Origin: Bugula neritina
Lineage: Eukaryota; Animalia; Bryozoa
NCBI GenBank assembly: GCA_964035545.1
Contig: CAXIUT010000064.1
Location: 6,611-70,610, forward strand
Reading direction: 5' to 3'
DNA: 64,000 nucleotides
Below are positions 12,561 to 64,000 of the stretch, piece by piece (position 1 is the first letter of the stretch; each line of letters begins with the position of its first letter). The position numbers were made by a program, and so were the translations under genes. The notes under the pieces are model-generated. The model did not search any database and had not been told where the DNA came from. It saw only the letters and a list, made by a program, of their open reading frames with translations.

Positions 12561-12599
12561 AAGTTTATTAATTAATATCTAGTTAAATGTATAATACAT

Positions 12600-13745: not shown

Positions 13746-13889
13746 TTAAATATTTATTAATAAAATTAATTTTATTTCTTTATTGTAAATAAAAAATATT
13801 AACTATAAATATATTTATCAGTAAAAACTAAGAATTAAAAAAAAAATTTTTATCTACTGTAAGTAATTTGATATCAATTGAAGATACAT

Positions 13890-14420: not shown

Positions 14421-14881
14421 ATTAAATTTTTTAATCAAAAAAATCATAATTAATTTTTAATTTTTTAAAGTTATAATTTTTTTTTTTTCCCTTAAAAAAA
14501 AATAAATCGGTTTTAAAAAAAATATTTATCAATAATATATAATTATAAAAATCTATACAATATAAATCTATATAATACATAAATCTAATATAATTTTTAA
14601 AAATGTTATAAAGGTTTTTATATTTTATAGTAATAAAATTATTATTAATTTTATTATATGTTAAATTATTTCGAAAAATTAAATCAATATCTATAAAATA
14701 TAATATTTTAAAAAACTGAATATACGAAAATCATACATTATAAGATAGTCATTTATAATTTTTATTATAAATAAATGAATTTCAAATCATTGAAGAATCA
14801 ATTCTATGTAAAGTAGATAAACTTTTTTGTGCTATAGTACTATATAAAAGAATTGCACTTTTAAAAAATTCTACTTATAGT

Positions 14882-16120: not shown

Positions 16121-16167
16121 GTGTAATTATTTATTTAAAAAAATAATATTAAAAATAGTAAAGTTAG

Positions 16168-40808: not shown

Positions 40809-40860
40809 ACTTTATATTTAAATAACTAAGTCATACTTTATATCTAAATAACTAAATTAT

Positions 40861-42807: not shown

Positions 42808-44742
42808 TTATTTAAATAATATCTTTTTATATTTAAACTTATTTAGTAGTATACTTTTATTATTTATAAAATTTTTATGTCTATACATTCTAGGTAAACC
42901 TTTAGTTTGTCATCATAACATAAAATGCTCAAAAGGTAATGCGCAAACTCTTATAGGCATATGGTGATGAAATCTTCCGCAAATTTCAGCACATTGTCCA
43001 TAATAAAAACCTATATTATCAATATAGAGAGAATGGTGTGTAGATCTGCCAGGTACACAGTCTATTTTTAATCCTAATCCTGGTACAAATCATGAATGAA
43101 CTACATCATAAGAATTCGTTATTAGCGTAATATTTATATGTGCAGGTAAAACTAATGTTCTTTTTGTTCTTAAAAGTCTTCGAGCTAGTGTAACAGGGAT
43201 TAACTCATTTTTATATTTATTATTTTTCATTATAGTATATATATTAAAATTATTTTGATAATTATTATCTAAAAAATTATAAATATTTTTGTACGTTATA
43301 TTACTATATTTAGGATTCTGTGGGAAACAAAAAGACTTCAATTTTCTATATTTTTTTTGTCTAAATCCTCAAAATTGTTCTACTTGTAAAACTTTTTCCG
43401 TAATATTAGTATTTTTTATACTATAATTTAAAAATATATTCTTATTTAAATTTTTATTATTTTTTAAAATATATAAATTATTTTTATTTAAAATACCCTT
43501 AATAATTCTTATAGGATATTTTACATTTTTTAATCTTAAATTTTCAGCACTTTCGTGTACTGTATCTAATCTATCTAGTTCAAAAAAATTATTTTTATTA
43601 TTTTTAATTGATTTACTTAACAAATTAAAATTGTTATTATAACCTTTTATTTTAGAATTATTTAATAAAATAATATTAGGTTTTTTTGCTAATTTTGATT
43701 GTTTATCAAGATTTTTTAATATAAATTGATAAACTTTAGAAAAATATTGATCTTTTAATGTATATTTTTTAAAATTATTACTAATATTAAATTGTAATTT
43801 TTTTTTTAAATTTATTATAAAATTATTATTAATAAATTTATTTTTTTTAATAGAAGGATTATTTTTAAATCTATAGGTTAAGTAATTTTTAGATGCTTTT
43901 GTTTTTTTTGACGAAAGCTTAAATTTTCGTAATTGTTCAGTTTTTTCTTTATAAGAATTATAATATTTTTCTAAAAAAGTTAGATTTAAATCTTTTTTAT
44001 TAAAAATATAAGACTTACAGAATTGAGATTTTTTTGAGTTATTTCATTTCTTTATATTATTTAAATATAAAGACGAATGTTTTTTAAAAAAATTTACATT
44101 ATTATCAACTTTAAAGTCTTTATAAATATTAACATTTGATATTAAACTAAATTTTTTAAAATTACTATTATTAAGAGAGAATCGTTGTAAATTTACTTTA
44201 TGAAGTTGTTTAAATTCATATTCATAAATAATTGACATTAAGCTATTTGTAAAAAAATAATTAGTTGTACTTTGAAGATTACTTTTCATTCAATTATTAT
44301 TTCCTACATTAATATAAATGTTATTAAGTTTATAGTTAATATCGGAACTATACTTATAGGTTCAGTATCACTGTTTACCTTGTATTCTGACAGTAAACAA
44401 AGAAGCTTCATTTTGTCATTCAATCATACGTAGTATGAAATTTGAATTTATCAGAATATTACCGCATCAACTTAGCGGTATTAAAGCTACCAAAAAATCA
44501 CCCCATTTCCCATGACTGCGCAATGACGTATTCAAAACTACGTTCAGCTTTTCAGCTCTATTATTATAACATCTTAATATTACAAAAAAATATAAAGATC
44601 ATAAAACTGCAAATCAAAATCATCATCAATATTGTCACTGAGATAACTGTACATGTACGTCATTCTTATGTGAAGCAAAACCGATGTTGAAATTTCTATG
44701 CATAGAATAGTCTACGTATAAAGTAGATCACAAGTACTTCAT
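42808..44742 (-). CDS. cox2: Cytochrome c oxidase subunit 2 (644 aa, large Asn/Lys-rich insertion)
   Basis: QWQYWWWFWF, GKQWYW, DVVHSW and GQCAEICGRFHHHMP; single frame checked across the insertion. Confidence 0.96.
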
Positions 44743-44779
44743 TAAGATTTGACTCTTTGTACTAAATACATGAAGTTTA

Positions 44780-47440
44780 TAAAAATTAATCAGCTAAATT
44801 AAGTAAAATTTATTATACTTCTATACAATTATTACTAATCTTATAAAGTATTTATTTTTATTAAAAATATTCTGTTTTTTACTTATTAAAAAAAAAAATT
44901 ACTTAAATTCCCCATATTGGTTATATAATTAGGCGTAACTGATCAACATGCAATTTTTATACAATTGATTATAATTGGCCTATCGTCTCCGGTCCTCTCG
45001 TACTGAGATAATTATAATTTTTTTTTTTATTACGTACAGTAGATAGGGACCAAACTGTCTCACAACGTTTTGAACCCAGCTCACGTACCATTTTATTTGA
45101 CGAACAGTCAAACCCTTGGCAGCGTATGCTCCGCCAGGATATGATGAGCCGACATCGAGGTGCCAAACGATTTCTTCAATAGGAGCTCTCAAAAATCATT
45201 AGCCTGTTATCCCTAGCGTACCTTTTATTCGTTGATCGATTTTTTTAGCAATATAAAAAATCGGTTCAATATGACAGAGTTACCTCCTTATATTACTAGT
45301 TAGTAATATAATCAGACTTATTTTGATCATTCATCTTTTTCTATATAATATATAGACTAAATCTTGTATTCACCTCCGTTACTTTTTAGGAGGTTGCCGC
45401 CCCAGCTAAACTGTCTTTCTAACAAAAAATAATACCATACAATTATTTTTAACTAACATATATAAAAAGTAGTTTTCCATTATTAAAAAATTTACTACAT
45501 ATCTATATTTTATATACATTTAATTAATTATTAGATAACAGTAAAGGTGCATAGGGTCTCTCCGTCTAGCTGTACATTAACGCATCTTCACGTTTAATTC
45601 AATTTCATAAAGTTAGTATTAGAGACAGTAGGGCAGTCGTTACACCATTCGTGCAGGACGGAACTTACCCGTCAAGGGATTTTGCTACCTTAGGACCGTT
45701 AGGATTACGGCCGCCGTTTATTGGGGCTTATACATAAACAGGATGTTTATGTTTTTTACCTTGCAACACTGGGCAGGTGTCAGACTTTATACTTCATAAC
45801 TATACTTAGCAAAGTCTTATGTTTTTGTTAAACAGTCGCTACCCTCATTTATTATAACTATTTAGTTCTTTTTCTCCCGAAGTTACAAAGATAATTTGCA
45901 GAGTTCCTTTAATACTATTATCTTTTATACCTTAGCTTACTCAGCTTATTAACTTGTGTTAGTATTAGTACAGTTTTTATTTTACAATTTTTTCTATATA
46001 TTAAATTTATATGAATATATATATATATATATATACTTTAATATTTAATATAGTTTTTATAAAATTCATCACTTTTTTTTTTTTAAAAAAGTTTAGATAC
46101 TGTATTACATGTAATAAATTTATTTTAATTACATAACCCTATAATATTAGGTATATATGTTTATACATATAATTATTACTCATATTAGCATAATTAATCT
46201 TTATATTTCCAATTTTTTTTACAAAAAATCTTCTACAATATAAAAGACACTCCACTACCTAATGTGTAATTTCAATAAATAGTTTTTTAACATTAATTTT
46301 AGAAAATTAAATATATGTTTATTAATTATATACAAAAAAAATATTTGATCTTTTACGATTTCTTAAAAGAATGGCTGATTCTAAGCCTATCTCTATATTT
46401 AATATTTAGTAATTTTCTTAATATTAACTATTTTTTATTATTTTAATTTACACTCTGGGCTGTTTCCCTCTCGACATTTAATCTTTGCACTAAATGTCTG
46501 TTTAAATATAAATATAGATACTAATTTATAAATTAATTTTCATTATCTCATTACCAAATATCTATATAATATTCACTTTACTTAAATAAATTTCGTGGAG
46601 AACCAGCTATAACTAAGCTTGATAAGCCTTTCACCCCTAATAACAAATCATCTCAAAATTTTGCAACATTTACGAGTTCAGCCTAATGCTTGTTCATTAT
46701 TAGATCGCTTAGTTTCGGGTCAAATACTATAAACTAAATTATTTTCACTATGCTTACGCTTGCTTATAGTATTTACTTGCTAATCCATTATACAAAAGGT
46801 ACAATAAAACATTCGCTTTATTTGATTTAATACATTAAAATTCAGTATTACTCATATTAATATGTTATTTCATCTATTTTTCGCAAAATATAATCTATAA
46901 AACTTAAGTTTTTTAGCAGTTAATTTACTAAATTTTTATAGTTATATAGATTAATAAGTAAACTTAATAGGTATTAAAAATTTTAAAAAATTTAAAATAC
47001 ACTAAAATATTAATATTACTTACTTAAATTTAATAGATTTAATTTTACTTAAATATATATATACAAAATTTAAATAAGTATATGATATTGTTTAATATAT
47101 TAATACTATATACTTTTAAATCAATCTTAAAGATCTACTTTTTTACAAGACTTTCACTTTCTATGGTTTATTTTTTTCAAAATAATTATTAAAATTTTTT
47201 ATTTTCTGCTAACTATTTTCGATCATCTCTACAATAGTTCTCAATTGAATTTTATAATTATATACTAAAATATTTTTCTTCTACAATATAATCCTATTAT
47301 TATTCATTAAAGACCAGGTCGTAATAATGATATATTCTTTATAAGAAAAATCTTTTACTCCATAGTTTTTAAATTATTCCTAATAATATAACTTAAGTTT
47401 TAGACATCCTTCTAATGTAATTTTTTTAGCTAATTAATTC
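44780..47440 (-). rRNA. rnl: Large-subunit rRNA (ends approximate)
   Basis: Sarcin-ricin loop AGTACGAGAGGAC, peptidyl-transferase GGCACCTCGATGTCGGCT, GAGCTGGGTTCAAAACG and GTACCTTTTGTATAATGG. Confidence 0.95.
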
Positions 47441-47466
47441 AATAAAAATATAAACTATATAAAAAA

Positions 47467-49542
47467 TTTAATTTACCTACAGATTCATCTACCAGTACCT
47501 TGTGTCAACTTAATTCAAATAACCTTTAAACTAATCAAACTTTTTTTTTTTTTTTATCATAGTGACACTTAAAAATCTATTTATTTCATTGCAAGAAAAA
47601 AAAAAAGGTAAGCGTCTTTATTAATCTAAAAACGCTCCGAATGTGATGGGCGGTGTGTGCAAAACTATTGTATTAATTCGCCATAACATCGTTATTTATG
47701 GTTACTAACGATTTCAACTTCTTCACTTCTGTTTCAGAAATGATTCTGCACTTTGATAATTTTTTAAACTGTCTCTAAATTACTTTTTTGAATTTTTTTG
47801 TTTTTATCATTGTAATACGTGTGTAGCCCAATATACTTAGATCGTGAGGACTTGACTTCAATTTACTTTAAAAATACACTTTCATAGAGTTTGTATATCA
47901 ATAACTAGTAAGATTACGTTCGTTATATAAACTTAATTATACACGTCAAAGCACGAACTGACGACAGCCATGCAGTACTATTTAAATATTAATTTAATTT
48001 TAATTTATTTAATTTATTATTATTACATATTGGTAAGATTTTACGTGGATTATCGCATTAAACCACATATTCCACCGTTCGATATAATTCCCGCCAATTC
48101 TGTTAGCTTTGAGATTTGCAACTGTACTCACCAGGTAGATTATTTTAACGTAAATTTTAATAATAATCAACATTCAGGGTAGAGATTACTAGGGTCTCTA
48201 ATCCTATTCATTTCCTCTACTTTCGTGTTTTAGCGTCAGATAAAACCGGTAAAATTCATTAGAATAATGGCAAAATTATTTAAATAATAGCGTATTTTAT
48301 CACTCTTTAAATAAGTTTTTTTACTTTTGTTTAATCTCAAAAATATTTTATATTACACATAATTTCAATTTATAAATCTAGTAGTATGTATAATTTTATT
48401 TAGCCCACACACCTTTTACACCCAATCATGCTGAATAACGCTTGTTGCTCAGGTCTTACCGCGGCTGCTGGCACCTGTATTTGCCACAACTTCTTTTTAT
48501 GTTTAATATCATAATTTTTACATTTGGATAAACTTTACAACTTCTATAGTTTTCGTCGTTTCCGTTAAATTGATAGGTCATACTTTCGTACATTGCCTAA
48601 TATTCTTCACTGCTGCCGTATGGTGGGGTTGTTTTCATACCCCATGTGGATGATTCTTCTCTCAAATCAACTAAAGATTATAGGCATATTAAAACAGCTA
48701 ATTTTAGTTTTAATATATACCTAATCTTACCCCATAAAACGTAAACCTAAAAATTTTTTAAATTATTAAGTATTTAAATATATATATACAATTATATATA
48801 TATATATATATACAATTAATAACTTAATTAGCATTAGTTTATTATTTTTTTATATAAATAGTTTTTAGAAATTTTATAAAAAAAAATTTTATTTAAAATC
48901 ACTTTAAAAATTAAAATTTTATAAAAATAATTTTACCTAAAATTACTTTAAAAAATTAAAATTTTATAAACTTTATTATATCTAATAAATAAAGTAAAAT
49001 AATAAAAAAATTTTTTATAATAATTAACAAAAATAAATACAAAAAATTTAATAACATTTTCCTAAGACAACAATTAAATAAAAATATTGGTTTATATTTT
49101 ATTTATTTGCCTCCATAAAGTGGCATACGTATATTGGTATCGTTGTTAATACCGTACCAATATACAGATTAATTCAAAATTAATTAATAATTTATTTTTC
49201 AAAAAAATTAATTAATACAATTAAAATACTATTGTTAATGTAGTAAATTTAATATTAAGAATAAATCTTTTGTCTGTATACCCCCTTAACATAGTTAAAT
49301 TTACTAATACTTATAACACGAATATACACACAACTTTCATGTGTACATTTTCTACGTTAAAAATTTTTTAAATCTATTAAAAGTATTTAACTTTCAGAAT
49401 CCTATTTTACTAAGCTTACTCACCACGACGCTATTTTATTTATTTTTTAAATTTTTAATTTAAAAAATAATCCCATTCAACTTGCATGTGTTATACATTT
49501 AACTAGCGTTCACTCTAAGCCAAGATCACACTCATAAATTTA
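47467..49542 (-). rRNA. rns: Small-subunit rRNA, probably split, with an AT-rich spacer or expansion at ~48750-49390
   Basis: 5' GAGTGTGATCTTGGCTTAG, GTGCCAGCAGCCGCGGTAA, GCACACACCGCCC and 3' ACAAGGTA...GATGAATCTG. Confidence 0.95.
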
Positions 49543-49619
49543 ATTACTAACCTTGATTCACAATATGTATATATATATATATATATATAAATTTTAATTA
49601 TTAAAACTTAACTAAAGAA

Positions 49620-50700
49620 AAAAAATAAAGATAGATTTTTAATTTTTTTTTTTTGTTTATTATAAATAAAGTAATATCAAATAGAGATATGTTTTATTAA
49701 ATAAAAAAATTACTTAGTAGAAATTTTTTTATAAACTTTTTTTATCTATTATAAATATAGCAACATTAAACAAAAATATGTTTTTTTTTTACTGGTAAAA
49801 AAAAAATTTTTATTTATTATAAGTAAGGCAATATTTAGTGGATATATTTTAGTGATTAAAAAATACTTGGTAGAATTTTTTTTATCTATTATAAGTAATA
49901 AAATATTAAGTTACAATATATTTTTACTTATAAAAAAAAAAATATTTAATAGAAATTTTTTTTATTTTCTGTTTATTATAAGTAATAATACATTAAGTTA
50001 TAACATATTTTTACTTGTAAAAAAAAAAATATTTAATAGAAATTGTTATAATTTTTTTTTATTTATTATTTATTATAGGTAATAAAACATTAAATTATAA
50101 CATATTTTTATTTGTAAAAAAAAAAACTATTTAATAGAAATTTTTTTTATTTTCTGTTTATTATAAGTAATAAAACATTAAGTTATAACATATTTTTACT
50201 TGTAAAAAAAAAATATTTAATAGAAATTTTTATAATTTTTTTTTTTATTTATTATTTATTATAAATAATAAAACATTAAATTATAACATATTTTTATTTG
50301 TAAAAAAAAAAAAACTATTTAATAGAAATTTTTTTTACTTTTCTGTTTATTATAAGTAATAATCCGTTAAGTTATAACATATTTTTACTTGTAAAAAAAA
50401 AAATATTTAATAGAAATTTTTATAATTTTTTTTTATTTATTATTTATTATAGGTAATAAAACATTAAATTATAACATATTTTTATTTGTAAAAAAAAAAA
50501 CTATTTAATAGAAATTTTTTTTACTTTTCTGTTTATTATAAGTAATAAACCGTTAAGTTATAACATATTTTTACTTGTAAAAAAAAAATTATTTAGTAAA
50601 AATTTTTATAATTTTTTTTATCTATTATTAATAAAGTAACGCTGAATAAATATATTTTTTAGTGATCAAGAATAGTTTAAATAGAATTTTTTGAAAACTT
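49620..50700. repeat. Repeat family A, locus 3 (~95-105-bp units, about 7 good plus degenerate flanking copies)
   Basis: Same unit as 1140-1690 and 13890-14420, in the same orientation. Confidence 0.9.
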
Positions 50701-52279
50701 TTTATAACTATCTTATCCTGTATATACGAAAAAAATAATAAGATAGAATATATATATGTATATATTACTTATATTATATTAGTATAAAATTTTTAAGTTA
50801 CTTATCTTATATTATATTAGTATAAAATTTTTAAGTTATTTATTTTTTTTAAAAATATTATAAAATACAATGATAAAACATATAAATATTATATAATTTC
50901 TAATTCTATAAAATTTTACATAACTTTTTTTTTTGATATAAATAGTATAAAAATAATAATAATAAAAATTCTACAGGTAAATTATTTTAAATTTTTTTTA
51001 TATTCTCCCTTTTTTTTTTCGTATAAGTTGCAAGATTAAAAAAAAAAAAATATTTATGAAAAAATAATTTTTTAAATTTTTCATATAAACTATTTGCTGC
51101 AGAAATTGTAAAGTAATAAAAACGTAGAAAGATTTTTATAAAGAAAAAAAAAAAGCATTCATTAGAAATAAAATACTTCTTTTATTATAAATATTGGGTA
51201 AGAAGAATAACAAATTAAAAAGTAAATATGAATTATCTTCAAAAATTGATTTTTTTCTCTTTTTTTTTTTATTAACTATGTAAAAAGAATCATATAAAGA
51301 TTATATTTCTAATACAAAGTATTAATTAATTAAAATTTTTTGTATAATAAATTATTAAAAATTTTATTAACTTATCATATTAAAGTAAGTATATATATAT
51401 ATATACTAGTACAAGTACTAACTGCACATTTAAAAAAAAAAAATAACAATTTATTATTAATAGTCAAAAAATAATATGTAATTTCATAAATTAATAATAA
51501 TTATCATAATACTCAGTTAAATAATAATTATTATTATTAATAACATAATTAATTAACACACTAATAAATAAAATAATATAGAAAATTTTAAACAATATAC
51601 CATATTTTATTTACCAACAACTAAAAAACTATAAAGTTTTTAATGCAAATTATTTAAAAAATATGATAAAAAAAGTATAATTTTCTTTAATAAACAATTA
51701 ATTTTAATTTTGTATGCACATATATATATCTTATAATTAATTTTACTCTTCAACAATAACATAAAACACCCTTCCAATCATCACTGATCATTGATATTAA
51801 TAAAACATATTACAAATTGATGATCAATTGATGATAATTATAATTAAATAATTAATCATATCAATATGTATGTATTCATACAACTATAATTTAAAAAAAA
51901 AAAATGTGATTAGTAATTTTTTCCTTCTAACCAATAAATTAGAATACATTATATTTCAAATACCATTATATTACAAATTACATTTAAACTTTAAAATGTT
52001 TTTAATAAAATAAAATAAAAAATATTTTTGTTATAAATTACTAATAACTATACAATTAAATAATCTAATATAATTAATTGTTATTTATACTTAATATAAA
52101 TAAATAAATACAAATTAATTTTTTTTTTTATAAGTATAAATATACTATAAATTTTTAATATACAATGAAGAATTGTAATTTATTACTATTCATTTATAGA
52201 TATATTATGATTATATTAACTTTATCAAATTTTACTATATTACAACATACATATATATTGCGAATATGTCAATTCCTTT

Positions 52280-52930
52280 TATTATATATTAAATTATATA
52301 TATATTGTAATATACAAATATAAATATTATAATTACATATATATATATTTTATAATTATATATTTATATAATGTAATATAATATATAAATATATATATAT
52401 AAAAAAATTTATTATTTACATAATATAATATATAAATATTTATTTATATAATATATAAATTTATTATTTATATATATATGTATATATATATATATATATT
52501 AAAAATATAAAATTATATATTTATATAATATATATAATATAATAAATAAATATATATTTATATAATACATAAATTTATTATTTATGTATATATATATATA
52601 TATTTATATTTATATAATATATATAATATAATAAATAAATATATATTTATATAATATATAAATTTATTATTTATATAATATATATAATATATATAATATA
52701 ATATATATATAGATATATATGTATAATTAAATATAAATTTATATATTTATAATATGTATATATATATATATATATAAATTTATATATTTATATGATATAT
52801 ATATATATTTATTATATAGTTATATGATATATATAATGTAATATATATATATATATAAATATAAATGATATATACATATATAATTATAAAATATATAAAC
52901 ATATACGTATATGTATAATGTATATAAATA
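52280..52930. repeat. Nearly pure TA-rich low-complexity tract; candidate control region
   Basis: (TA)n runs and short direct repeats such as atatatataatataataaataaatatata; almost no G or C. Confidence 0.8.
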
Positions 52931-53639
52931 AAAAATTGAAGTATAAATTCGTATAAAATAATATTAATTTGGTCTTATTTTTAATAATTAAATATTAAAT
53001 TTTATATTAATATATATGGGTATATGTATAAGTTTTACAATTGTATAAGTGTATAAAGTATATATTAAATTTTTTTTAAGTATATTATTAAGATATGTTG
53101 ATTGTAAGAGTATTAGATATATTAAATATAGAAAAATTAAAAATTTGATAATTGTCGTAATTTATTAATTTATATGGGTTATATGTTTTTACGTAGGTAT
53201 AAGTCTGTTAGTATGTATATACATATTTATATTAGGCATTATAATGGTATATGTGTTTAGTATATATATAAAAGTGTATTTTTATAAGATTGGTTATGTA
53301 ATTATATCGATGCATATTTGATAAACTAATTGTATTTAGAAAAGGATAAAAAGCGTAATATATGTATATATATATATATAATTGGTTAATTGATGTGGTT
53401 ATAAGTAATTTATTTAGTAGTAAAGTGATTGATTGATAATTATAGATATAAGTATGGGTATATATTTACGTACACAGATAAATTTTTTTATGAATAAATA
53501 TATTTGAAATAATGGTGATATGGCTATTCTTAATTGTAATTTTTTCATATTTTATAATTAAAGTTGAAGTTATGGTATTAATATAAATATATTTATTTGA
53601 GCGTTAACTATACTAATTTTAAATATTTTTTTTTAATTA

Positions 53640-56600
53640 TTATTATAAATTTTTTTATATAAAATTTATTTAAATACTTTATTTATCAAATTTTAAAGAT
53701 TTTTTATAATAAAATAAAGCTGTAAATTTCTTACACAAAACTTACTTAATTACCTTATTTATCAAATTTTAAATATTTTTTATAATAAATTAAAGTTATA
53801 AATTTCTTACATAAAATCTACTTGAATAACTTATCTATCAAATTTTAAATATTTTTATAATAAATTAAAGTTATAAATTTCTTACATAAAACCTACTTGA
53901 ATAACTTATCTATCAAATTTTAAATACCTTTTTATAATAAATTAAAGTTATAAATTTCTTACATAAAACCTATTTGAATAACTTATCTATCAAATTTTAA
54001 ATATTTTTTATAATAAATTAAAGCTGTAAATTTCTTACATAAAACCTACTTGAATAACTTATCTATCAAATTTTAAATATTTTTATAATAAATTAAAGTT
54101 ATAAATTTCTTACATAAAACCTACTTAAATAACTTATCTATCAAATTTTAAATATTTTTTATAATAAATTAAAGCTGTAAATTTCTTACATAAAACCTAC
54201 TTGAATAACTTATCTATCAAATTTTAAATATTTTTATAATAAATTAAAGTTATAAATTTCTTATATAAAACCTACTTAATTACCTTATCTATCAAATTTT
54301 AAATACCTTTTTATAATAAATTAAAGTTATAAATTTCTTATATAAAACCTACTTAATTACCTTATCTATCAAATTTTAAATACCTTTTTATAATAAATTA
54401 AAGTTATAAATTTCTTACATAAAACCTACTTAAATAACTTATCTATCAAATTTTAAATACCTTTTTATAATAAATTAAAGCTGTAAATTTCTTACATAAA
54501 ACCTACTTGAATAATTTATTTATATAAGATTTGTATAAGAAATTTATAACTTTAATTTATTATATAAAACCTACTTAATTACCTTATCTATCAAATTTTA
54601 AATACCTTTTTATAATAAATTAAAGCTGTAAATTTCTTACATAAAACCTACTTGAATAATTTATTTATATAAGATTTGTATAAGAAATTTATAACTTTAA
54701 TTTATTATAAAAAGGTATTTAAAATTTGATAGATAAGTTATTTAAGTAGGTTTTATGTAAGAAATTTATAACTTTAATTTATTATAAAAAATATTTAAAA
54801 TTTGATAGATAAGGTAATTAAGTAGGTTTTATATAAGAAATTTATAACTTTAATTTATTATAAAAAGGTATTTAAAATTTGATAGATAAGTTATTTAAGT
54901 AAGTTTTATGTAAGAAATTTATAACTTTAATTTATTATAAAAAGGTATTTAAAATTTGATAGATAAGGTAATTAAGTAGGTTTTATGTAAGAAATTTATA
55001 ACTTTAATTTATTATAAAAATATTTAAAATTTGATAGATAAGTTATTTAAGTAAATTTCTTATATAAAACCTACTTAATTACCTTATCTATCAAATTTTA
55101 AATATTTTTATAATAAATTAAAGTTATAAATTTCTTATATAAAACCTACTTGAATAACTTATCTATCAAATTTTAAATACCTTTTTATAATAAATTAAAG
55201 TTATAAATTTCTTATATAAAACCTACTTAATTACCTTATCTATCAAATTTTAAATACCTTTTTATAATAAATTAAAGTTATAAATTTCTTACATAAAACC
55301 TATTTGAATAACTTATCTATCAAATTTTAAATACCTTTTTATAATAAATTAAAGCTGTAAATTTCTTACATAAAACCTACTTAATTACCTTATCTATCAA
55401 ATTTTAAATACCTTTTTATAATAAATTAAAGTTATAAATTTCTTATATAAAACCTACTTAATTACCTTATCTATCAAATTTTAAATATTTTTTATAATAA
55501 ATTAAAGTTATAAATTTCTTACATAAAACCTATTTGAATAACTTATCTATCAAATTTTAATACCTTTTTATAATAAATTAAAGCTGTAAATTTCTTACAT
55601 AAAACCTACTTAATTACCTTATCTATCAAATTTTAAATACCTTTTTATAATAAATTAAAGTTATAAATTTCTTACATAAAACCTACTTAAATAACTTATC
55701 TATCAAATTTTAAATACCTTTTTATAATAAATTAAAGTTATAAATTTCTTATACAAATCTTATATAAATAAATTATTCAAGTAGGTTTTATGTAAGAAAT
55801 TTATAACTTTAATTTATTATAAAAAATATTTAAAATTTGATAGATAAGGTAATTAAGTAGGTTTTATATAAGAAATTTATAACTTTAATTTATTATAAAA
55901 AGGTATTTAAAATTTGATAGATAAGTTATTTAAGTAAGTTTTATGTAAGAAATTTATAACTTTAATTTATTATAAAAAGTTATTATTGTTATTTAAAATT
56001 TGATAGATAAGGTAATTAAGTAGGTTTTATGTAAGAAATTTATAACTTTAATTTATTATAAAAATATTTAAAATTTGATAGATAAGTTATTTAAGTAAAT
56101 TTCTTATATAAAACCTACTTAATTACCTTATCTATCAAATTTTAAATATTTTTATAATAAATTAAAGTTATAAATTTCTTATATAAAACCTACTTAAATA
56201 ACTTATCTATCAAATTTTAAATATTTTTTATAATAAATTAAAGCTGTAAATTTCTTACATAAAACCTACTTAATTACCTTATCTATCAAATTTTAAATAC
56301 CTTTTTATAATAAATTAAAGTTATAAATTTCTTATATAAAACCTACTTAATTACCTTATCTATCAAATTTTAAATATTTTTTATAATAAATTAAAGCTGT
56401 AAATTTCTTACATAAAACCTACTTGAATAATTTATTTATATAAGATTTGTATAAGAAATTTATAACTTTAATTTATTATAAAAAGGTATTTAAAATTTGA
56501 TAGATAAGTTATTTAAGTAGGTTTTATGTAAGAAATTTATAACTTTAATTTATTATAAAAAATATTTAAAATTTGATAGATAAGGTAATTAAGTAGGTTT

Positions 56601-59600
56601 TATATAAGAAATTTATAACTTTAATTTATTATAAAAAGGTATTTAAAATTTGATAGATAAGGTAATTAAGTAGGTTTTATGTAAGAAATTTACAGCTTTA
56701 ATTTATTATAAAAAATATTTAAAATTTGATAGATAAGGTAATTAAGTAGGTTTTATATAAGAAATTTATAACTTTAATTTATTATAAAAAGGTATTTAAA
56801 ATTTGATAGATAAGTTATTTAAGTAAGTTTTATGTAAGAAATTTATAACTTTAATTTATTATAAAAAGGTATTTAAAATTTGATAGATAAGGTAATTAAG
56901 TAGGTTTTATGTAAGAAATTTATAACTTTAATTTATTATAAAAATATTTAAAATTTGATAGATAAGTTATTTAAGTAAATTTCTTATATAAAACCTACTT
57001 AATTACCTTATCTATCAAATTTTAAATATTTTTATAATAAATTAAAGTTATAAATTTCTTATATAAAACCTACTTAAATAACTTATCTATCAAATTTTAA
57101 ATATTTTTTATAATAAATTAAAGCTGTAAATTTCTTACATAAAACCTACTTAATTACCTTATCTATCAAATTTTAAATACCTTTTTATAATAAATTAAAG
57201 TTATAAATTTCTTATATAAAACCTACTTAATTACCTTATCTATCAAATTTTAAATATTTTTTATAATAAATTAAAGCTGTAAATTTCTTACATAAAACCT
57301 ACTTAATTACCTTATCTATCAAATTTTAAATACCTTTTTATAATAAATTAAAGTTATAAATTTCTTATATAAAACCTACTTAATTACCTTATCTATCAAA
57401 TTTTAAATACCTTTTTATAATAAATTAAAGTTATAAATTTCTTATATAAAACCTACTTAATTACCTTATCTATCAAATTTTAAATATTTTTTATAATAAA
57501 TTAAAGTTATAAATTTCTTACATAAAACCTACTTAAATAACTTATCTATCAAATTTTAAATACCTTTTTATAATAAATTAAAGTTATAAATTTCTTATAC
57601 AAATCTTATATAAATAAATTATTCAAGTAGGTTTTATGTAAGAAATTTACAGCTTTAATTTATTATAAAAAATATTTAAAATTTGATAGATAAGGTAATT
57701 AAGTAGGTTTTATATAAGAAATTTATAACTTTAATTTATTATAAAAAGGTATTTAAAATTTGATAGATAAGGTAATTAAGTAGGTTTTATGTAAGAAATT
57801 TACAGCTTTAATTTATTATAAAAAATATTTAAAATTTGATAGATAAGTTATTTAAGTAGGTTTTATATAAGAAATTTATAACTTTAATTTATTATAAAAA
57901 TATTTAAAATTTGATAGATAAGGTAATTAAGTAGGTTTTATATAAGAAATTTACTTAAATAACTTATCTATCAAATTTTAAATATTTTTATAATAAATTA
58001 AAGTTATAAATTTCTTACATAAAACCTACTTAATTACCTTATCTATCAAATTTTAAATACCTTTTTATAATAAATTAAAGTTATAAATTTCTTACATAAA
58101 ACTTACTTAAATAACTTATCTATCAAATTTTAAATACCTTTTTATAATAAATTAAAGTTATAAATTTCTTATATAAAACCTACTTAATTACCTTATCTAT
58201 CAAATTTTAAATATTTTTTATAATAAATTAAAGTTATAAATTTCTTATACAAATCTTATATAAATAAATTATTCAAGTAGGTTTTATGTAAGAAATTTAC
58301 AACTTTAATTTATTATAAAAAATATTTAAAATTTGATAGATAAGGTAATTAAGTAGGTTTTATATAAGAAATTTATAACTTTAATTTATTATAAAAAGGT
58401 ATTTAAAATTTGATAGATAAGTTATTTAAGTAAGTTTTATGTAAGAAATTTATAACTTTAATTTATTATAAAAAGGTATTTAAAATTTGATAGATAAGGT
58501 AATTAAGTAGGTTTTATGTAAGAAATTTATAACTTTAATTTATTATAAAAATATTTAAAATTTGATAGATAAGTTATTTAAGTAAATTTCTTATATAAAA
58601 CCTACTTAATTACCTTATCTATCAAATTTTAAATATTTTTATAATAAATTAAAGTTATAAATTTCTTATATAAAACCTACTTAAATAACTTATCTATCAA
58701 ATTTTAAATATTTTTTATAATAAATTAAAGCTGTAAATTTCTTACATAAAACCTACTTAATTACCTTATCTATCAAATTTTAAATACCTTTTTATAATAA
58801 ATTAAAGTTATAAATTTCTTATATAAAACCTACTTAATTACCTTATCTATCAAATTTTAAATATTTTTTATAATAAATTAAAGCTGTAAATTTCTTACAT
58901 AAAACCTACTTGAATAATTTATTTATATAAGATTTGTATAAGAAATTTATAACTTTAATTTATTATAAAAAGGTATTTAAAATTTGATAGATAAGTTATT
59001 TAAGTAGGTTTTATGTAAGAAATTTATAACTTTAATTTATTATAAAAAATATTTAAAATTTGATAGATAAGGTAATTAAGTAGGTTTTATATAAGAAATT
59101 TATAACTTTAATTTATTATAAAAAGGTATTTAAAATTTGATAGATAAGGTAATTAAGTAGGTTTTATGTAAGAAATTTACAGCTTTAATTTATTATAAAA
59201 AATATTTAAAATTTGATAGATAAGGTAATTAAGTAGGTTTTATATAAGAAATTTATAACTTTAATTTATTATAAAAAGGTATTTAAAATTTGATAGATAA
59301 GTTATTTAAGTAGGTTTTATGTAAGAAATTTACAGCTTTAATTTATTATAAAAAATATTTAAAATTTGATAGATAAGGTAATTAAGTAGGTTTTATATAA
59401 GAAATTTATAACTTTAATTTATTATAAAAAGGTATTTAAAATTTGATAGATAAGGTAATTAAGTAGGTTTTATGTAAGAAATTTACAGCTTTAATTTATT
59501 ATAAAAAATATTTAAAATTTGATAGATAAGTTATTTAAGTAGGTTTTATATAAGAAATTTATAACTTTAATTTATTATAAAAATATTTAAAATTTGATAG

Positions 59601-62600
59601 ATAAGGTAATTAAGTAGGTTTTATATAAGAAATTTACTTAAATAACTTATCTATCAAATTTTAAATATTTTTATAATAAATTAAAGTTATAAATTTCTTA
59701 CATAAAACCTACTTAATTACCTTATCTATCAAATTTTAAATACCTTTTTATAATAAATTAAAGTTATAAATTTCTTACATAAAACTTACTTAAATAACTT
59801 ATCTATCAAATTTTAAATACCTTTTTATAATAAATTAAAGTTATAAATTTCTTATATAAAACCTACTTAATTACCTTATCTATCAAATTTTAAATATTTT
59901 TTATAATAAATTAAAGCTGTAAATTTCTTACATAAAACCTACTTAATTACCTTATCTATCAAATTTTAAATACCTTTTTATAATAAATTAAAGTTATAAA
60001 TTTCTTATATAAAACCTACTTAATTACCTTATCTATCAAATTTTAAATATTTTTTTATAATAAATTAAAGTTATAAATTTCTTACATAAAACCTACTTAA
60101 ATAACTTATCTATCAAATTTTAAATACCTTTTTATAATAAATTAAAGTTATAAATTTCTTATACAAATCTTATATAAATAAATTATTCAAGTAGGTTTTA
60201 TGTAAGAAATTTATAACTTTAATTTATTATAAAAAGGTATTTAAAATTTGATAGATAAGGTAATTAAGTAGGTTTTATGTAAGAAATTTATAACTTTAAT
60301 TTATTATAAAAATATTTAAAATTTGATAGATAAGTTATTTAAGTAAATTTCTTATATAAAACCTACTTAATTACCTTATCTATCAAATTTTAAATATTTT
60401 TATAATAAATTAAAGTTATAAATTTCTTATATAAAACCTACTTAAATAACTTATCTATCAAATTTAAATATTTTTTATAATAAATTAAAGCTGTAAATTT
60501 CTTACATAAAACCTACTTAATTACCTTATCTATCAAATTTTAAATACCTTTTTATAATAAATTAAAGTTATAAATTTCTTATATAAAACCTACTTAATTA
60601 CCTTATCTATCAAATTTTAAATATTTTTTATAATAAATTAAAGTTATAAATTTCTTACATAAAACCTACTTAAATAACTTATCTATCAAATTTTAAATAC
60701 CTTTTTATAATAAATTAAAGTTATAAATTTCTTATACAAATCTTATATAAATAAATTATTCAAGTAGGTTTTATGTAAGAAATTTACAGCTTTAATTTAT
60801 TATAAAAAATATTTAAAATTTGATAGATAAGGTAATTAAGTAGGTTTTATATAAGAAATTTATAACTTTAATTTATTATAAAAAGGTATTTAAAATTTGA
60901 TAGATAAGGTAATTAAGTAGGTTTTATGTAAGAAATTTACAGCTTTAATTTATTATAAAAAATATTTAAAATTTGATAGATAAGTTATTTAAGTAGGTTT
61001 TATATAAGAAATTTATAACTTTAATTTATTATAAAAATATTTAAAATTTGATAGATAAGGTAATTAAGTAGGTTTTATATAAGAAATTTACTTAAATAAC
61101 TTATCTATCAAATTTTAAATATTTTTATAATAAATTAAAGTTATAAATTTCTTACATAAAACCTACTTAATTACCTTATCTATCAAATTTTAAATACCTT
61201 TTTATAATAAATTAAAGCTGTAAATTTCTTACATAAAACCTACTTAATTACCTTATCTATCAAATTTTAAATACCTTTTTATAATAAATTAAAGTTATAA
61301 ATTTCTTATATAAAACCTACTTAATTACCTTATCTATCAAATTTTAAATATTTTTTATAATAAATTAAAGCTGTAAATTTCTTACATAAAACCTACTTGA
61401 ATAATTTATTTATATAAGATTTGTATAAGAAATTTATAACTTTAATTTATTATAAAAAGGTATTTAAAATTTGATAGATAAGTTATTTAAGTAGGTTTTA
61501 TGTAAGAAATTTATAACTTTAATTTATTATAAAAAATATTTAAAATTTGATAGATAAGGTAATTAAGTAGGTTTTATATAAGAAATTTATAACTTTAATT
61601 TATTATAAAAAGGTATTTAAAATTTGATAGATAAGGTAATTAAGTAGGTTTTATGTAAGAAATTTACAGCTTTAATTTATTATAAAAAATATTTAAAATT
61701 TGATAGATAAGTTATTTAAGTAGGTTTTATATAAGAAATTTATAACTTTAATTTATTATAAAAATATTTAAAATTTGATAGATAAGGTAATTAAGTAGGT
61801 TTTATATAAGAAATTTACTTAAATAACTTATCTATCAAATTTTAAATATTTTTATAATAAATTAAAGTTATAAATTTCTTACATAAAACCTACTTAATTA
61901 CCTTATCTATCAAATTTTAAATACCTTTTTATAATAAATTAAAGTTATAAATTTCTTACATAAAACCTACTTGAATAATTTATTTATATAAGATTTGTAT
62001 AAGAAATTTATAACTTTAATTTATTATAAAAAGGTATTTAAAATTTGATAGATAAGTTATTTAAGTAGGTTTTATGTAAGAAATTTATAACTTTAATTTA
62101 TTATAAAAAATATTTAAAATTTGATAGATAAGGTAATTAAGTAGGTTTTATATAAGAAATTTATAACTTTAATTTATTATAAAAAGGTATTTAAAATTTG
62201 ATAGATAAGGTAATTAAGTAGGTTTTATGTAAGAAATTTACAGCTTTAATTTATTATAAAAAATATTTAAAATTTGATAGATAAGGTAATTAAGTAGGTT
62301 TTATATAAGAAATTTATAACTTTAATTTATTATAAAAAGGTATTTAAAATTTGATAGATAAGTTATTTAAGTAAGTTTTATGTAAGAAATTTATAACTTT
62401 AATTTATTATAAAAAGGTATTTAAAATTTGATAGATAAGGTAATTAAGTAGGTTTTATGTAAGAAATTTATAACTTTAATTTATTATAAAAATATTTAAA
62501 ATTTGATAGATAAGTTATTTAAGTAAATTTCTTATATAAAACCTACTTAATTACCTTATCTATCAAATTTTAAATATTTTTATAATAAATTAAAGTTATA

Positions 62601-64000
62601 AATTTCTTATATAAAACCTACTTAAATAACTTATCTATCAAATTTTAAATATTTTTTATAATAAATTAAAGCTGTAAATTTCTTACATAAAACCTACTTA
62701 ATTACCTTATCTATCAAATTTTAAATACCTTTTTATAATAAATTAAAGTTATAAATTTCTTATATAAAACCTACTTAATTACCTTATCTATCAAATTTTA
62801 AATATTTTTTATAATAAATTAAAGCTGTAAATTTCTTACATAAAACCTACTTAAATAACTTATCTATCAAATTTTAAATACCTTTTTATAATAAATTAAA
62901 GTTATAAATTTCTTATATAAAACCTACTTAATTACCTTATCTATCAAATTTTAAATATTTTTTATAATAAATTAAAGCTGTAAATTTCTTACATAAAACC
63001 TACTTAATTACCTTATCTATCAAATTTTAAATACCTTTTTATAATAAATTAAAGTTATAAATTTCTTATATAAAACCTACTTAATTACCTTATCTATCAA
63101 ATTTTAAATATTTTTTATAATAAATTAAAGTTATAAATTTCTTACATAAAACCTACTTAAATAACTTATCTATCAAATTTTAAATACCTTTTTATAATAA
63201 ATTAAAGTTATAAATTTCTTATACAAATCTTATATAAATAAATTATTCAAGTAGGTTTTATGTAAGAAATTTACAGCTTTAATTTATTATAAAAAATATT
63301 TAAAATTTGATAGATAAGGTAATTAAGTAGGTTTTATATAAGAAATTTATAACTTTAATTTATTATAAAAAGGTATTTAAAATTTGATAGATAAGGTAAT
63401 TAAGTAGGTTTTATGTAAGAAATTTACAGCTTTAATTTATTATAAAAAATATTTAAAATTTGATAGATAAGTTATTTAAGTAGGTTTTATATAAGAAATT
63501 TATAACTTTAATTTATTATAAAAATATTTAAAATTTGATAGATAAGGTAATTAAGTAGGTTTTATATAAGAAATTTACTTAAATAACTTATCTATCAAAT
63601 TTTAAATATTTTTATAATAAATTAAAGTTATAAATTTCTTACATAAAACCTACTTAATTACCTTATCTATCAAATTTTAAATACCTTTTTATAATAAATT
63701 AAAGTTATAAATTTCTTACATAAAACTTACTTAAATAACTTATCTATCAAATTTTAAATACCTTTTTATAATAAATTAAAGTTATAAATTTCTTATATAA
63801 AACCTACTTAATTACCTTATCTATCAAATTTTAAATATTTTTTATAATAAATTAAAGTTGTAAATTTCTTACATAAAACCTACTTGAATAATTTATTTAT
63901 ATAAGATTTGTATAAGAAATTTATAACTTTAATTTATTATAAAAAATATTTAAAATTTGATAGATAAGGTAATTAAGTAGGTTTTATATAAGAAATTTAT
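53640..64000. repeat. Telomere-like array of 75-77-bp units in alternating inverted blocks
   Basis: Unit ttatctatcaaattttaaata(cc)tttttataataaattaaag(t/c)t(a/g)taaatttctta(c/t)ataaaacctactt(aattacc/aaataac/gaataac); degenerate at the left edge and runs off the window end. Confidence 0.95.

What the first reader, a model, noticed from the sequence alone, without database searches (positions are those of the whole stretch)
56400..64000. Nested multi-kilobase palindromes record successive doubling of the array
Seen: junction positions mirror about two axes. About 58268 (a J1 tip): J2 57953/58583 and J1 57618/58918 are exactly equidistant and of opposite isomer, and the symmetry continues to ~56430/60180 with about one unit of slip. 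About 61080 (a J2 loop): J1 tips 60755/61405, 60182/61979, 58918/63242 and 58268/63892 each sum to 122160-122161 and J2 60344/61816 also mirrors. A rare variant (tttacaac near 58300) reappears as gttgtaaa near 63860. So at least 5.8 kb is one palindrome, and its left arm reaches the axis of the other. Inference: repeated fold-back of a 3' end with strand-displacement copying of progressively longer tracts, rather than unequal crossover or circle rolling, which would give direct repeats.
Basis: partly seen in the sequence, partly recalled or inferred. Interest (0 to 1): 0.85.

Follow-up and report, generated by a model that had tools for sequence, protein, structure and literature searches.

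The report
Nested palindromes in mitochondrial repeat array
At one end of a ciliate mitochondrial genome, a 10-kb run of 77-bp repeats keeps reversing direction and contains three nested, almost perfect multi-kilobase palindromes. They look like the footprint of a DNA end that repeatedly folds back on itself and copies itself, but the youngest ones could also be sequencing artefacts.

Summary
The window is a ciliate mitochondrial genome (TGA=Trp, all genes on the minus strand). Upstream of the first gene (rns) lies a non-coding leader, then an array of 75-77-bp units at least 10.4 kb long (53615-64000) in 24 blocks of alternating orientation. Only two turnaround junction types occur (J1 x13, J2 x11), each identical in all copies and present as both mirror isomers.

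Three nested inverted duplications exist:
- E1: arms of about 0.7-0.9 kb around 56986.
- E2: arms of 1.84 kb around 58268, with 1809 of 1813 bases matching.
- E3: arms of at least 2.8 kb around 61080, differing by two single-T indels and cut by the window end.

Each centre is an older, imperfect junction module. The unique new joints lie on the gene-distal side, and copy age falls from proximal to distal. This fits serial fold-back or template-switch copying that extends the array outward.

Whether the youngest palindromes arose in the cell (hairpin end or head-to-head dimer) or in an amplified long-read library cannot be decided from sequence alone. Relatives place this region at a contig end.

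The parts
44792..46845 (-). Large-subunit rRNA gene
   Evidence: Rfam RF02541, 863 bits. Relatives have the same order, rns-rnl-cox2-cob.
47463..48677 (-). Small-subunit rRNA gene. It is the first gene downstream of the non-coding region.
   Evidence: Rfam SSU hit, 239 bits. All ORFs and RNAs from 200 to 48700 are on the minus strand.
48678..53614 (.). Non-coding leader between rns and the array. It contains 93/186-bp tandem repeats (about 49600-50640) and a TA-rich tract (52283-52930).
   Evidence: TRF and the sequence itself. No Rfam match. Relatives have a TA tract and tandem repeats in the same position.
53615..64000 (.). Array of 75-77-bp units (about 135 units, about 86% A+T) in 24 blocks of alternating orientation. 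It runs off the window end.
   Evidence: TRF, block map and junction census.

J1 loops are centred at 54521, 54666, 55766, 56437, 57612, 58262, 58924, 60176, 60749, 61411, 61985, 63236 and 63898.

J2 loops are centred at 55059, 56103, 56983, 57946, 58590, 59629, 60351, 61083, 61810, 62531 and 63570.
53615..56100 (.). Gene-proximal, oldest part of the array. It has diverged unit variants and already carries 5 orientation switches of the same J1 and J2 types.
   Evidence: The longest exact copy covering a base is only 81-394 bp here, against 836-1896 bp further out. The 'g' unit variants are confined to this zone.
54534..54565 (.). A 31-nt stretch in reverse orientation between a J1 loop and a unique third junction type. 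It is a small, aborted turnaround.
   Evidence: Read directly from the sequence.
55990..56680 (.). E1 left arm
   Evidence: Exact 691-bp inverted match to 57369-58059. The match extends towards 55766/58262 with one ~10-bp indel.
56681..57368 (.). E1 centre: an older, imperfect palindrome around the J2 loop at 56971-56995 (7 units on one side, 8 on the other).
57369..58059 (.). E1 right arm (the copy)
   Evidence: It ends at the J1 at 58262, whose last unit is a hybrid.
56400..58235 (.). E2 left arm. It contains the E1 axis.
   Evidence: The 91-mer across its outer boundary occurs 6 times, so it is not a new joint.
58236..58300 (.). E2 centre: J1 turnaround (loop 58250-58274)
   Evidence: As single-stranded DNA it folds into a hairpin of -42.3 kcal/mol, z = -12.9.
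58301..60212 (.). E2 right arm (the copy). It carries one extra 76-bp unit and a 145-bp patch (59168-59312) copied from another block.
60167..60257 (.). Unique joint at the outer end of the E2 right arm, just past a J1 loop
   Evidence: The 91-mer occurs only here and in its E3 mirror at 61904.
60213..60465 (.). Patchwork of two short direct copies between E2 and the next large inverted copy
   Evidence: In the left-to-right copy parse these are phrases of 180 and 230 bp.
58160..60961 (.). E3 left arm. It contains the E2 axis, and its left limit is set by the window end on the other side.
   Evidence: 1896-bp exact inverted match.
60962..61198 (.). E3 centre: a pre-existing imperfect J2 module (loop 61071-61095). 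It holds all the substitutions between the two arms.
   Evidence: The stretch 60506-61217 is an exact direct copy of 57369-58080. It folds into a hairpin of -49.2 kcal/mol, z = -16.9.
61163..61253 (.). Unique joint where the old J2 module passes into the mirrored copy (overlap 61199-61217)
   Evidence: The 91-mer is unique in the window, while the left-hand counterpart 60917-61007 occurs 9 times. The unit is chimeric, type 'aCwc'.
61199..64000 (.). E3 right arm (the copy), cut by the window end

Best explanation
**What it is.** The array is a genuine part of the main non-coding region of a linear ciliate mitochondrial chromosome. It lies beyond the first gene (rns) and is most likely the chromosome end.

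**How it grows.** It is a 77-bp satellite that is extended at its gene-distal side by repeated fold-back. A single-stranded 3' end that stops shortly past one of two hairpin-prone turnaround modules (J1 or J2) snaps back on the opposite arm of that module. It is then extended, copying the array inward. Once the copy is made double-stranded, the array has gained an inverted copy of its own distal part. Occasional template switches at other J1 or J2 hairpins and one-unit slips add patches.

**What iteration produces.** Repeating this gives alternating blocks, both mirror isomers of each junction, and nested palindromes that are younger and longer toward the end. The youngest palindrome (axis 61080) may be the present hairpin terminus read through, or a head-to-head replication dimer as in Paramecium.

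**Shown:** the anatomy, the nesting, the direction of copying and the age gradient.

**Inferred:** that this happens in the cell, that the array is terminal, and that it serves end maintenance or replication initiation.
For: **Organelle and host**
- One tRNA has the anticodon UCA (reads TGA as Trp), and 5 tRNAs are present in all.
- cox1 pieces frame a Pfam-unmatched middle, the insertion typical of ciliate cox1.
- The best solved-structure match of rpl2 is the Tetrahymena mitoribosome protein 6z1p_Ac.

**Position**
- All genes point away from the array.
- The window holds the whole conserved gene set seen in 31-35 kb contigs of relatives. It runs from rns to the last conserved ORF at 2170-2652.
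- One relative's contig starts 1 kb upstream of rns, inside a tandem repeat.

**Junctions**
- There are only two recurrent junction types. All 13 J1 and all 11 J2 copies are identical over 53 nt, with both isomers about equally frequent.
- Both junctions fold as strong DNA hairpins.

**Nested events**
- Three nested, near-perfect inverted duplications exist.
- Their centres are older imperfect modules.
- Unique joints occur only on the distal side.

**Age and growth**
- The copy parse changes from pieces of at most 338 bp to inverted phrases of 399-1890 bp beyond 57445.
- Copy age shows a proximal-to-distal gradient.
- The proximal 4 kb already has the same architecture but is diverged and scrambled, so the process predates any library preparation.

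**Control and precedent**
- Shuffle control.
- Paramecium mtDNA has a hairpin end with tandem repeats and a dimer replication intermediate (PMC7961746).
Against: - No reads are available, so none of the distal joints is verified on native molecules.
- Near-100% arms that run to the end of the data are also what amplified long-read libraries and hairpin read-through produce.
- The window ends inside the youngest palindrome, so neither a terminus nor a dimer is seen.
- In one relative (L085) the equivalent non-coding region lies between divergent gene blocks, not at an end.
- The relatives examined show only direct repeats there, although they are short-read assemblies that would collapse such arrays.
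- No replication or resolution enzyme is encoded in the window.
- The stretch 60213-61217 needs template switches to distant sites, not just fold-back.
Confidence: 0.55

Rival explanations
1. The distal 6.5 kb (E1/E2/E3, or at least E2 and E3) is an artefact of the laboratory or the assembler. Strand-displacement whole-genome amplification, or chimeric long reads, snapped back at the natural J1/J2 inverted modules. This produced palindromic, multi-inversion molecules that the assembler used to extend the contig end. Only the proximal alternating blocks would then be natural.
For: - The arms of E2 and E3 are practically identical. The remaining E3 differences are homopolymer length calls.
- The youngest palindrome runs to the end of the available sequence.
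- Ciliates are often sequenced from single cells after amplification.
Against: - All turnarounds use the same two pre-existing modules rather than scattered microhomologies.
- The proximal part shows the same architecture with real divergence, so the process exists in nature.
- The E2 arms differ by a unit indel and a variant-swapping patch, which simple in-vitro snap-back copying does not predict.
- The coding 49 kb shows no palindromic disturbance.
Confidence: 0.3
2. The pattern comes from ordinary homologous recombination alone. Unequal exchange duplicates a higher-order unit (F block - J1 - R block - J2), and flip-flop inversions between oppositely oriented blocks do the rest. No fold-back replication is involved.
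For: - Long exact direct repeats exist, up to 907 bp, with shifts of 2487, 3137, 5548 and 5624.
- One-unit slips and a 145-bp patch look like exchange or conversion.
- The stretch 60506-61217 is an exact direct copy of 57369-58080.
Against: - Inversions do not duplicate. Unequal exchange would copy junctions with the same isomer, yet mirrored pairs are always opposite isomers and equidistant to the base over 2.9 kb.
- The direct shifts equal twice the distance between palindrome axes.
- New joints sit next to hairpin centres and only on the distal side.
- The parse needs six long inverted phrases for 5.3 of the last 6.5 kb.
Confidence: 0.1
3. The array is an internal control region (origin and bidirectional promoter, as in spirotrich central repeats or relative L085), not a chromosome end. 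The palindromes would be by-products of cruciform-prone DNA at an origin.
For: - All genes to the left are transcribed away from it.
- In L085 the corresponding region, with a TA tract and tandem repeats, lies between divergent gene blocks.
- Spirotrich central repeats are A+T-rich and are proposed origins and promoters (PMC7961746).
Against: - The whole conserved gene set lies on one side.
- Relatives with the same gene order have contigs that end in this region.
- The size (at least 10.4 kb) and the proximal-to-distal age gradient fit a growing end better than a fixed internal element.
- Spirotrich central repeats are 140-170 bp long in the examples read in PMC7961746, and all lie between trnF and trnY.
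Confidence: 0.15

Closest known systems
Paramecium mitochondrial replication-initiation end (cross-linked hairpin with A+T-rich tandem repeats; head-to-head dimer intermediate)
   Same: Both are ciliate linear mtDNA with genes essentially in one direction and an A+T-rich tandem repeat region at one end. The loop is non-palindromic and can occur in both orientations. Replication through a hairpin predicts a long perfect palindrome around an imperfect centre, which is exactly the E3 anatomy (PMC7961746).
   Different: As summarised in PMC7961746, Paramecium repeats are direct tandem repeats next to a single hairpin. Here the array reverses 24 times and keeps internalised former turnarounds. The unit sequence is unrelated. 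Covalent closure and dimers are not observed here.
Large palindromes primed by a short inverted repeat next to a break (Tetrahymena rDNA palindrome, palindromic gene amplification in yeast and mammalian cells)
   Same: A short imperfect inverted repeat with an asymmetric spacer sits at the centre of a long, nearly perfect palindrome. The new joint is on one side only. The comparison rests on my own knowledge of that literature.
   Different: Those are single nuclear events. Here the process is iterated at least three times within a tandem array in an organelle, and it reuses two fixed modules.
Rolling-hairpin and hairpin-telomere replicons (hairpin-ended linear mtDNAs of some yeasts and Polytomella, linear plasmids; parvovirus and poxvirus ends as textbook models)
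   Same: They share flip and flop isomers of an imperfectly paired terminal hairpin, tandem repeats next to the hairpin, and an imperfect palindrome embedded in perfect inverted repeats at the junction. This is from my own knowledge, with PMC3105423 surfaced as background on yeast linear mtDNAs but not read; no sequences were fetched.
   Different: Those ends keep a constant length and a single axis. This array accumulates old axes. No resolvase or nickase is encoded in the window.
Macro-dyad symmetries of Tribolium satellite DNA
   Same: Both have kilobase sub-arrays of alternating orientation. Both have very few inversion-site types, each highly conserved and containing a diverged sub-unit, with predicted long hairpins (PMC13081366).
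   Different: The Tribolium arrays are nuclear, pericentromeric and megabase-scale, and were reported as known only in Tribolium. This one is mitochondrial, 10 kb long, with an age gradient pointing to growth at one end.
Tetrahymena and spirotrich mitochondrial telomeres and spirotrich central repeats
   Same: They are species-specific tandem repeats in non-coding parts of ciliate linear mtDNA (PMC7961746).
   Different: Those units are 13-53 bp and uniformly oriented within an array. The central repeats read in that paper are 142-170 bp long, and all lie between trnF and trnY. Here the units are 75-77 bp, the array is at least 10.4 kb, orientation alternates, and the array lies next to rns.
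Palindromic chimeric reads from multiple displacement amplification
   Same: They are nested, near-perfect inverted duplications made by fold-back and strand displacement (PMC13265396, PMC6218980).
   Different: Artefact junctions are expected at many positions. Here every turnaround is one of two pre-existing modules, and the proximal copies are diverged.

Membership tests
Paramecium-type hairpin (cross-linked) mitochondrial terminus | Ciliate mitochondrial chromosome | tested here: met
   A tRNA with anticodon UCA (reads TGA as Trp), few tRNAs, cox1 pieces framing an unmatched insertion, and a Tetrahymena uL2m best structural match. Synteny with ciliate-like metagenome contigs.
Paramecium-type hairpin (cross-linked) mitochondrial terminus | Covalently closed single-stranded loop joining the two strands at one end | not testable with these tools
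   This needs native DNA or reads. The window ends inside the palindrome.
Paramecium-type hairpin (cross-linked) mitochondrial terminus | A+T-rich direct tandem repeats next to the loop | tested here: inconclusive
   The A+T-rich 75-77-bp tandem units are present, but their orientation alternates in 24 blocks.
Paramecium-type hairpin (cross-linked) mitochondrial terminus | Head-to-head dimer: a palindrome through the loop that continues into the genes | tested here: inconclusive
   The palindrome about 61080 has arms of at least 2.9 kb and is limited only by the window end. Whether it continues is unknown.
Short-inverted-repeat-primed large palindrome | Long, nearly perfect arms around a pre-existing short imperfect inverted repeat with an asymmetric spacer | tested here: met
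   The E3 centre, 60962-61198, holds all substitutions and is a copy of the module at 57946. E2 and E1 behave likewise.
Short-inverted-repeat-primed large palindrome | Novel joint on the copied side only | tested here: met
   61163-61253 and 60167-60257 are unique, while their left-hand counterparts are multi-copy.
Short-inverted-repeat-primed large palindrome | A free end or break next to the inverted repeat at the time of formation | not testable with these tools
   Inferred only from the joint lying 135 bp past the loop.
Tetrahymena/spirotrich-type mitochondrial telomere | Uniformly oriented short tandem repeats (13-53 bp) capping the ends | tested here: not met
   The units are 75-77 bp and there are 24 orientation blocks. 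Comparator values are from PMC7961746.
Spirotrich central repeat region | Short A+T-rich repeat between trnF and trnY, separating divergent transcription units | tested here: not met
   The neighbour is rns, and trnF and trnY lie 30-50 kb away. The size is at least 10.4 kb. The right flank is unknown.
Macro-dyad symmetric satellite arrays (Tribolium) | Sub-arrays of alternating orientation joined by a few highly conserved inversion sites with a diverged sub-unit | tested here: met
   All J1 and J2 copies are identical over 53 nt. The J1 loop is a diverged 25-nt unit piece.
Macro-dyad symmetric satellite arrays (Tribolium) | Nuclear (peri)centromeric location | tested here: not met
   The array is contiguous with mitochondrial rRNA and protein genes.
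Amplification (MDA) palindromic chimera | Library made by strand-displacement amplification; junctions present in only some reads | not testable with these tools
   No reads or library metadata are available.
Amplification (MDA) palindromic chimera | Inversion points scattered at arbitrary microhomologies | tested here: not met
   Every switch but one uses the same J1 or J2 module. Snap-back at natural inverted repeats would, however, also be favoured in vitro.

The most novel reading that the evidence does not exclude
The array is a self-renewing 'accordion' telomere. This ciliate would maintain the end of its linear mitochondrial chromosome without telomerase, t-circles or terminal proteins. 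Instead, a hairpin would fold back repeatedly at two dedicated turnaround modules, each round adding an inverted copy of the distal array. The palindrome at 61080 would be the live hairpin end or replication dimer junction. The sequence would then be a readable, ordered record of successive end-replication events, and a generalisation of the 1981 Paramecium hairpin model.
Probability: 0.3. Interest if true: 0.8.

Novelty: new variant of a known kind. Interest (0 to 1): 0.6.

Why it matters
How linear mitochondrial chromosomes replicate and protect their ends is still settled for only a few organisms. In ciliates two very different solutions are on record: uniform tandem-repeat telomeres, and the Paramecium hairpin with a dimer intermediate.

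If real, this array would be a third pattern that links the two. It is a tandem-repeat end whose internal structure preserves the order, direction and turnaround points of successive hairpin-primed copying events. The mechanism then becomes testable from single-molecule reads alone.

It would also extend 'macro-dyad' satellite architecture, reported so far only from beetle centromeres, to an organelle.

If the distal part proves to be an amplification artefact, the case is still useful. It would show how natural inverted junctions seed multi-inversion chimeras at contig ends.

Tried and rejected
**Method problems**
- A gapless axis scan found only the 58268 palindrome, because the other centres are asymmetric. 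It was replaced by gapped and exact-match analyses.
- Two script attempts failed: one got no answer and one used unsupported BLAST scoring.

**Searches for the source and close relatives**
- An exact look-up of a window ORF found nothing on record, and rpl2 had no 100% hit.
- A 38-nt unit pattern gave 0 hits in metagenome, viral and GTDB contigs.
- An rns 5' motif gave 0 hits in viral contigs.
- The nearest DNA found is a 1.8-kb contig of GCA_041156805.1, roughly 80% identical.
- The search for related loci with an rpl2 alignment returned mostly low-identity (25-51%) matches, apparently bacterial L2, because one pattern used was the near-universal VRGVAMNP.
- The cox2 piece 43372-44043 had a single weak hit.
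- The 1981 Paramecium paper is not held.

**Gene annotation**
- Pfam on stop-free pieces missed cob. Local blastp under code 4 against relatives showed that 41356-42711 is cob. Every search-tool query used stop-free pieces by reference.

**Readings considered and rejected**
- CRISPR-like array: the units abut without spacers.
- Transposon or plasmid insertion: there is no ORF of 40 aa or more in 53.6-64 kb, and no polymerase or transposase family was found.
- A structured RNA gene in the leader: no Rfam match.
- Chance similarity among repeat units: rejected by the shuffle control.


Full report
**What the window is**

The window is very A+T-rich (G+C 11-28%). It carries LSU and SSU rRNA genes and five tRNAs, all on the minus strand. 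One tRNA has the anticodon UCA and so reads TGA as Trp. Under genetic code 4 every long ORF between 200 and 48700 is also on the minus strand.

Stop-free pieces, submitted by reference, hit these families: nad1, nad2/4/5-type, nad3, nad7, nad10, cox1, cox2, atp9, rps12, rpl2, rpl14 and rpl16. The cox1 matches leave a Pfam-unmatched stretch between them, the insertion typical of ciliate cox1. The best solved-structure relative of rpl2 is the Tetrahymena mitoribosome protein 6z1p_Ac, and the alignment runs end to end. This is a ciliate mitochondrial genome.

The species is not in the protein collection. The closest DNA found is a 1.8-kb contig of assembly GCA_041156805.1, roughly 80% identical. 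I could not name that organism.

**Where the array sits**

Relatives were found with the conserved ORF at 39732-40811, whose homologues are 56-67% identical. Their 31-35 kb contigs have the one-direction order: repeats, rns, rnl, tRNA, cox2, cob, orf103, orf359, nad5 ... rpl2 ... nad7, orf139, orf161, end.

Local blastp under code 4 gave these matches between the window and those relatives:

| Window ORF | Gene | Identity |
|---|---|---|
| 41356-42711 | cob | 75% |
| 42811-44793 | cox2 | 71% |
| 14885-16126 | nad7 | 83% |
| 2170-2652 | last conserved ORF of the relatives | 57% |

The window therefore holds the complete conserved gene set between about 2.1 and 49.6 kb. The array lies beyond the first gene.

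One relative's contig begins 1 kb upstream of rns, inside a 334-bp direct repeat. Another begins in a TA tract. In a third (L085) the rns-rnl-cox2-cob block is inverted, so the equivalent non-coding region lies between divergent gene blocks. That region contains 99-bp repeats, a TA tract and 163-bp direct repeats.

I conclude that the array belongs to the conserved repeat-bearing control region upstream of rns. In this gene order that region is most likely the chromosome end, but this is not shown. None of these short-read relatives shows block-inverted arrays. Such assemblies would collapse them, so this says little.

**The observation**

From 53615 to the window end there are about 135 units of 75-77 bp. 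They form 24 blocks of alternating orientation, with sizes 12, 5, 8-9, 4, 4, 7, 8, 4, 4, 4, 4, 9, 7, 2, 5, 4 | 4, 5, 2, 7, 9, 4, 4, 1+.

Blocks are joined by only two junction types:
- **J1 (forward to reverse).** The loop is a diverged 25-nt piece of a unit plus about 12 nt. There are 13 copies, 6 of one isomer and 7 of the other.
- **J2 (reverse to forward).** The turn sits on the unit's own TTATATAA mini-palindrome and is always flanked by 75-bp units. There are 11 copies, 5 and 6 of the two isomers.

All copies of each type are identical over the 53 nt examined. One further small turnaround exists at 54534-54565. Both junctions fold as strong DNA hairpins, at -42.3 and -49.2 kcal/mol with z-scores of -12.9 and -16.9.

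The region 58160-64000 is a palindrome about 61080 at 99.56% identity. The longest exact inverted match is 1896 bp, against at most 554 bp in 60 shuffles of unit order.

**Anatomy of the three palindromes**

- **E3 (axis 61080).** The arms 58160-60961 and 61199-64000 differ only by two single-T indels. Every substitution lies in the 237-bp centre, 60962-61198. That centre is not new: 60506-61217 is an exact direct copy of the older J2 module at 57369-58080.
- **E2 (axis 58268).** In the arms 56400-58235 and 58301-60212, 1809 of 1813 bases match, plus one 76-bp unit indel and one 1-nt indel. The unit indel goes with a 145-bp patch (59168-59312) copied from another block.
- **E1 (axis about 56986, one-unit slip).** 55990-56680 matches 57369-58059 exactly. 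The match continues to the flanking J1 loops with one ~10-bp indel, around a ~690-bp imperfect centre.

Each later left arm contains the earlier axis, and the arm length rises from about 0.7-0.9 kb to 1.84 kb to at least 2.8 kb.

**Direction and age**

The 91-mer across the right inner boundary of E3 (61163-61253) is unique, and that unit is a chimera. Its left-hand counterpart occurs 9 times. The right outer boundary of E2 (60167-60257) occurs only there and in its E3 mirror, whereas the left outer boundary occurs 6 times. So the right-hand, gene-distal arms are the copies.

A left-to-right parse that allows reverse-complement sources uses pieces of at most 338 bp up to 57444. After that, six inverted phrases of 399-1890 bp cover about 5.3 of the last 6.5 kb. 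The longest exact copy covering a base rises from 81-394 bp (53615-56100), to 836-907 bp, to 1896 bp.

The gene-proximal part is therefore old and scrambled, yet it already has the same architecture. The distal part is young. This is the signature of an array that turns over at its outer end.

**Mechanism**

The simplest account is as follows. A 3' end stops a short distance past a J1 or J2 loop: 135 bp in E3, and within one unit in E2. It anneals to the opposite arm of that imperfect module and is extended along the array toward the genes. Once copied into duplex, the array has gained an inverted copy.

The E1 right arm ends exactly at the J1 where E2 turns. E2 ends just past another J1. The hairpin-prone junctions thus also act as template-switch points. 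The stretch 60213-61217 is a mosaic of copies of distant array segments, which shows that switches are not always local.

The large direct repeats have shifts equal to twice the distance between axes: 5624, 5548 = 5624-76, and 2487. They follow from successive reflections and need no separate process. Unequal exchange plus inversion alone cannot give opposite isomers at base-exact mirror positions with one-sided new joints.

The steps that are shown are the anatomy, the nesting, the copy direction and the age gradient. The steps that are inferred are the single-stranded 3' end, its origin (chromosome end, break or displaced strand), and the cellular setting.

**What cannot be decided**

A long perfect palindrome around an imperfect centre that runs off the data has four possible readings:
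1. A recent bounded inverted duplication.
2. The chromosome's hairpin end read through by a long read.
3. A head-to-head replication dimer, as described for Paramecium (PMC7961746).
4. A palindromic chimera from strand-displacement amplification. Such chimeras are documented to give multi-inversion mitochondrial reads that derail long-read assembly (PMC13265396; PMC6218980).

Several points argue against a pure artefact:
- Only two pre-existing modules are ever used.
- The proximal copies are genuinely diverged.
- E2 carries a unit indel and a patch.

But snap-back at natural inverted modules would be favoured in vitro too.

My estimates are:

| Reading | Probability |
|---|---|
| Natural fold-back growth, with readings 1-3 as variants | about 0.55 |
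| Artefact for the distal part | about 0.3 |
| Recombination alone | about 0.1 |

Separately, I put the chance that the region is internal rather than terminal at about 0.15.

**Comparison with what is known**

- It works like short-inverted-repeat-primed palindrome formation and like rolling-hairpin or hairpin-telomere replication (own knowledge).
- Its closest organellar relative in concept is the Paramecium hairpin end.
- It does not meet the definition of Tetrahymena or spirotrich telomeres, or of spirotrich central repeats, in unit size, uniform orientation or position (PMC7961746).
- Its architecture, a few perfectly conserved inversion sites each containing a diverged sub-unit, matches the macro-dyad satellites reported so far only from Tribolium nuclei (PMC13081366).

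I found no description of such an array in a mitochondrial genome in the papers searched. That is a limited search. I rate it a new variant of a known kind.

Noticed in passing
window 4350-9400: Four tandem copies of a ~1.25-kb segment (spacing 1244-1258 bp, 90-99% identical). Each carries a 163-aa ORF under code 4 (4741-5229, 5999-6487, 7252-7740, 8496-8984). No Pfam family was found for the piece tested.
   Followed up: partly
window 2652-14434: About 11.8 kb lies between the homologues of the relatives' orf139 (14434-14874) and their last ORF (2170-2652). In the relatives that gap is only a few hundred bases. The extra DNA holds the 1.25-kb tandem copies, a 297-aa ORF, a tRNA and repeat fragments.
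   Followed up: partly
window 1147-1685, 13935-14225, 49600-50640: One family of 86-93-bp (also 146- and 186-bp) tandem repeats occurs at three separate non-coding sites, including the leader upstream of rns.
   Followed up: no
window 49503-49522 (-), 9983-10002 (-), 10044-10063 (-): A motif resembling the conserved 5' end of SSU rRNA lies about 800 bp upstream of the Rfam SSU hit. It may be a separate 5' rRNA piece, as in other ciliates. Two degenerate copies lie about 39 kb away in a 61-bp tandem duplication. Rfam gave no separate hit.
   Followed up: partly
window 52283-52930; L085 8230-8586; L086 1-120: A TA-rich, microsatellite-like tract sits between rns and the tandem repeats both in the window and in two relatives. 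It appears to be a conserved part of the control region.
   Followed up: partly
L087 1574-8195: One relative (contig k141_16523503) carries four consecutive cox2-like ORFs (474-550 aa) between rnl and cob.
   Followed up: no
L085 1-7000: In one relative the rns-rnl-cox2-cob block is inverted relative to the rest of the genes. This gives two divergent transcription units around the non-coding region.
   Followed up: partly
window 11084-11156 (-): ARAGORN reports a tRNA with an abnormal two-base anticodon call, while Rfam scores it as a tRNA at 57 bits. It overlaps the start of the ORF at 10216-11106.
   Followed up: no
window 41356-42711 (-): Pfam did not detect cytochrome b, because many TGA codons cut it into short stop-free pieces. 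It is nevertheless 75% identical over its full length to the Pfam-annotated cob of a relative.
   Followed up: yes
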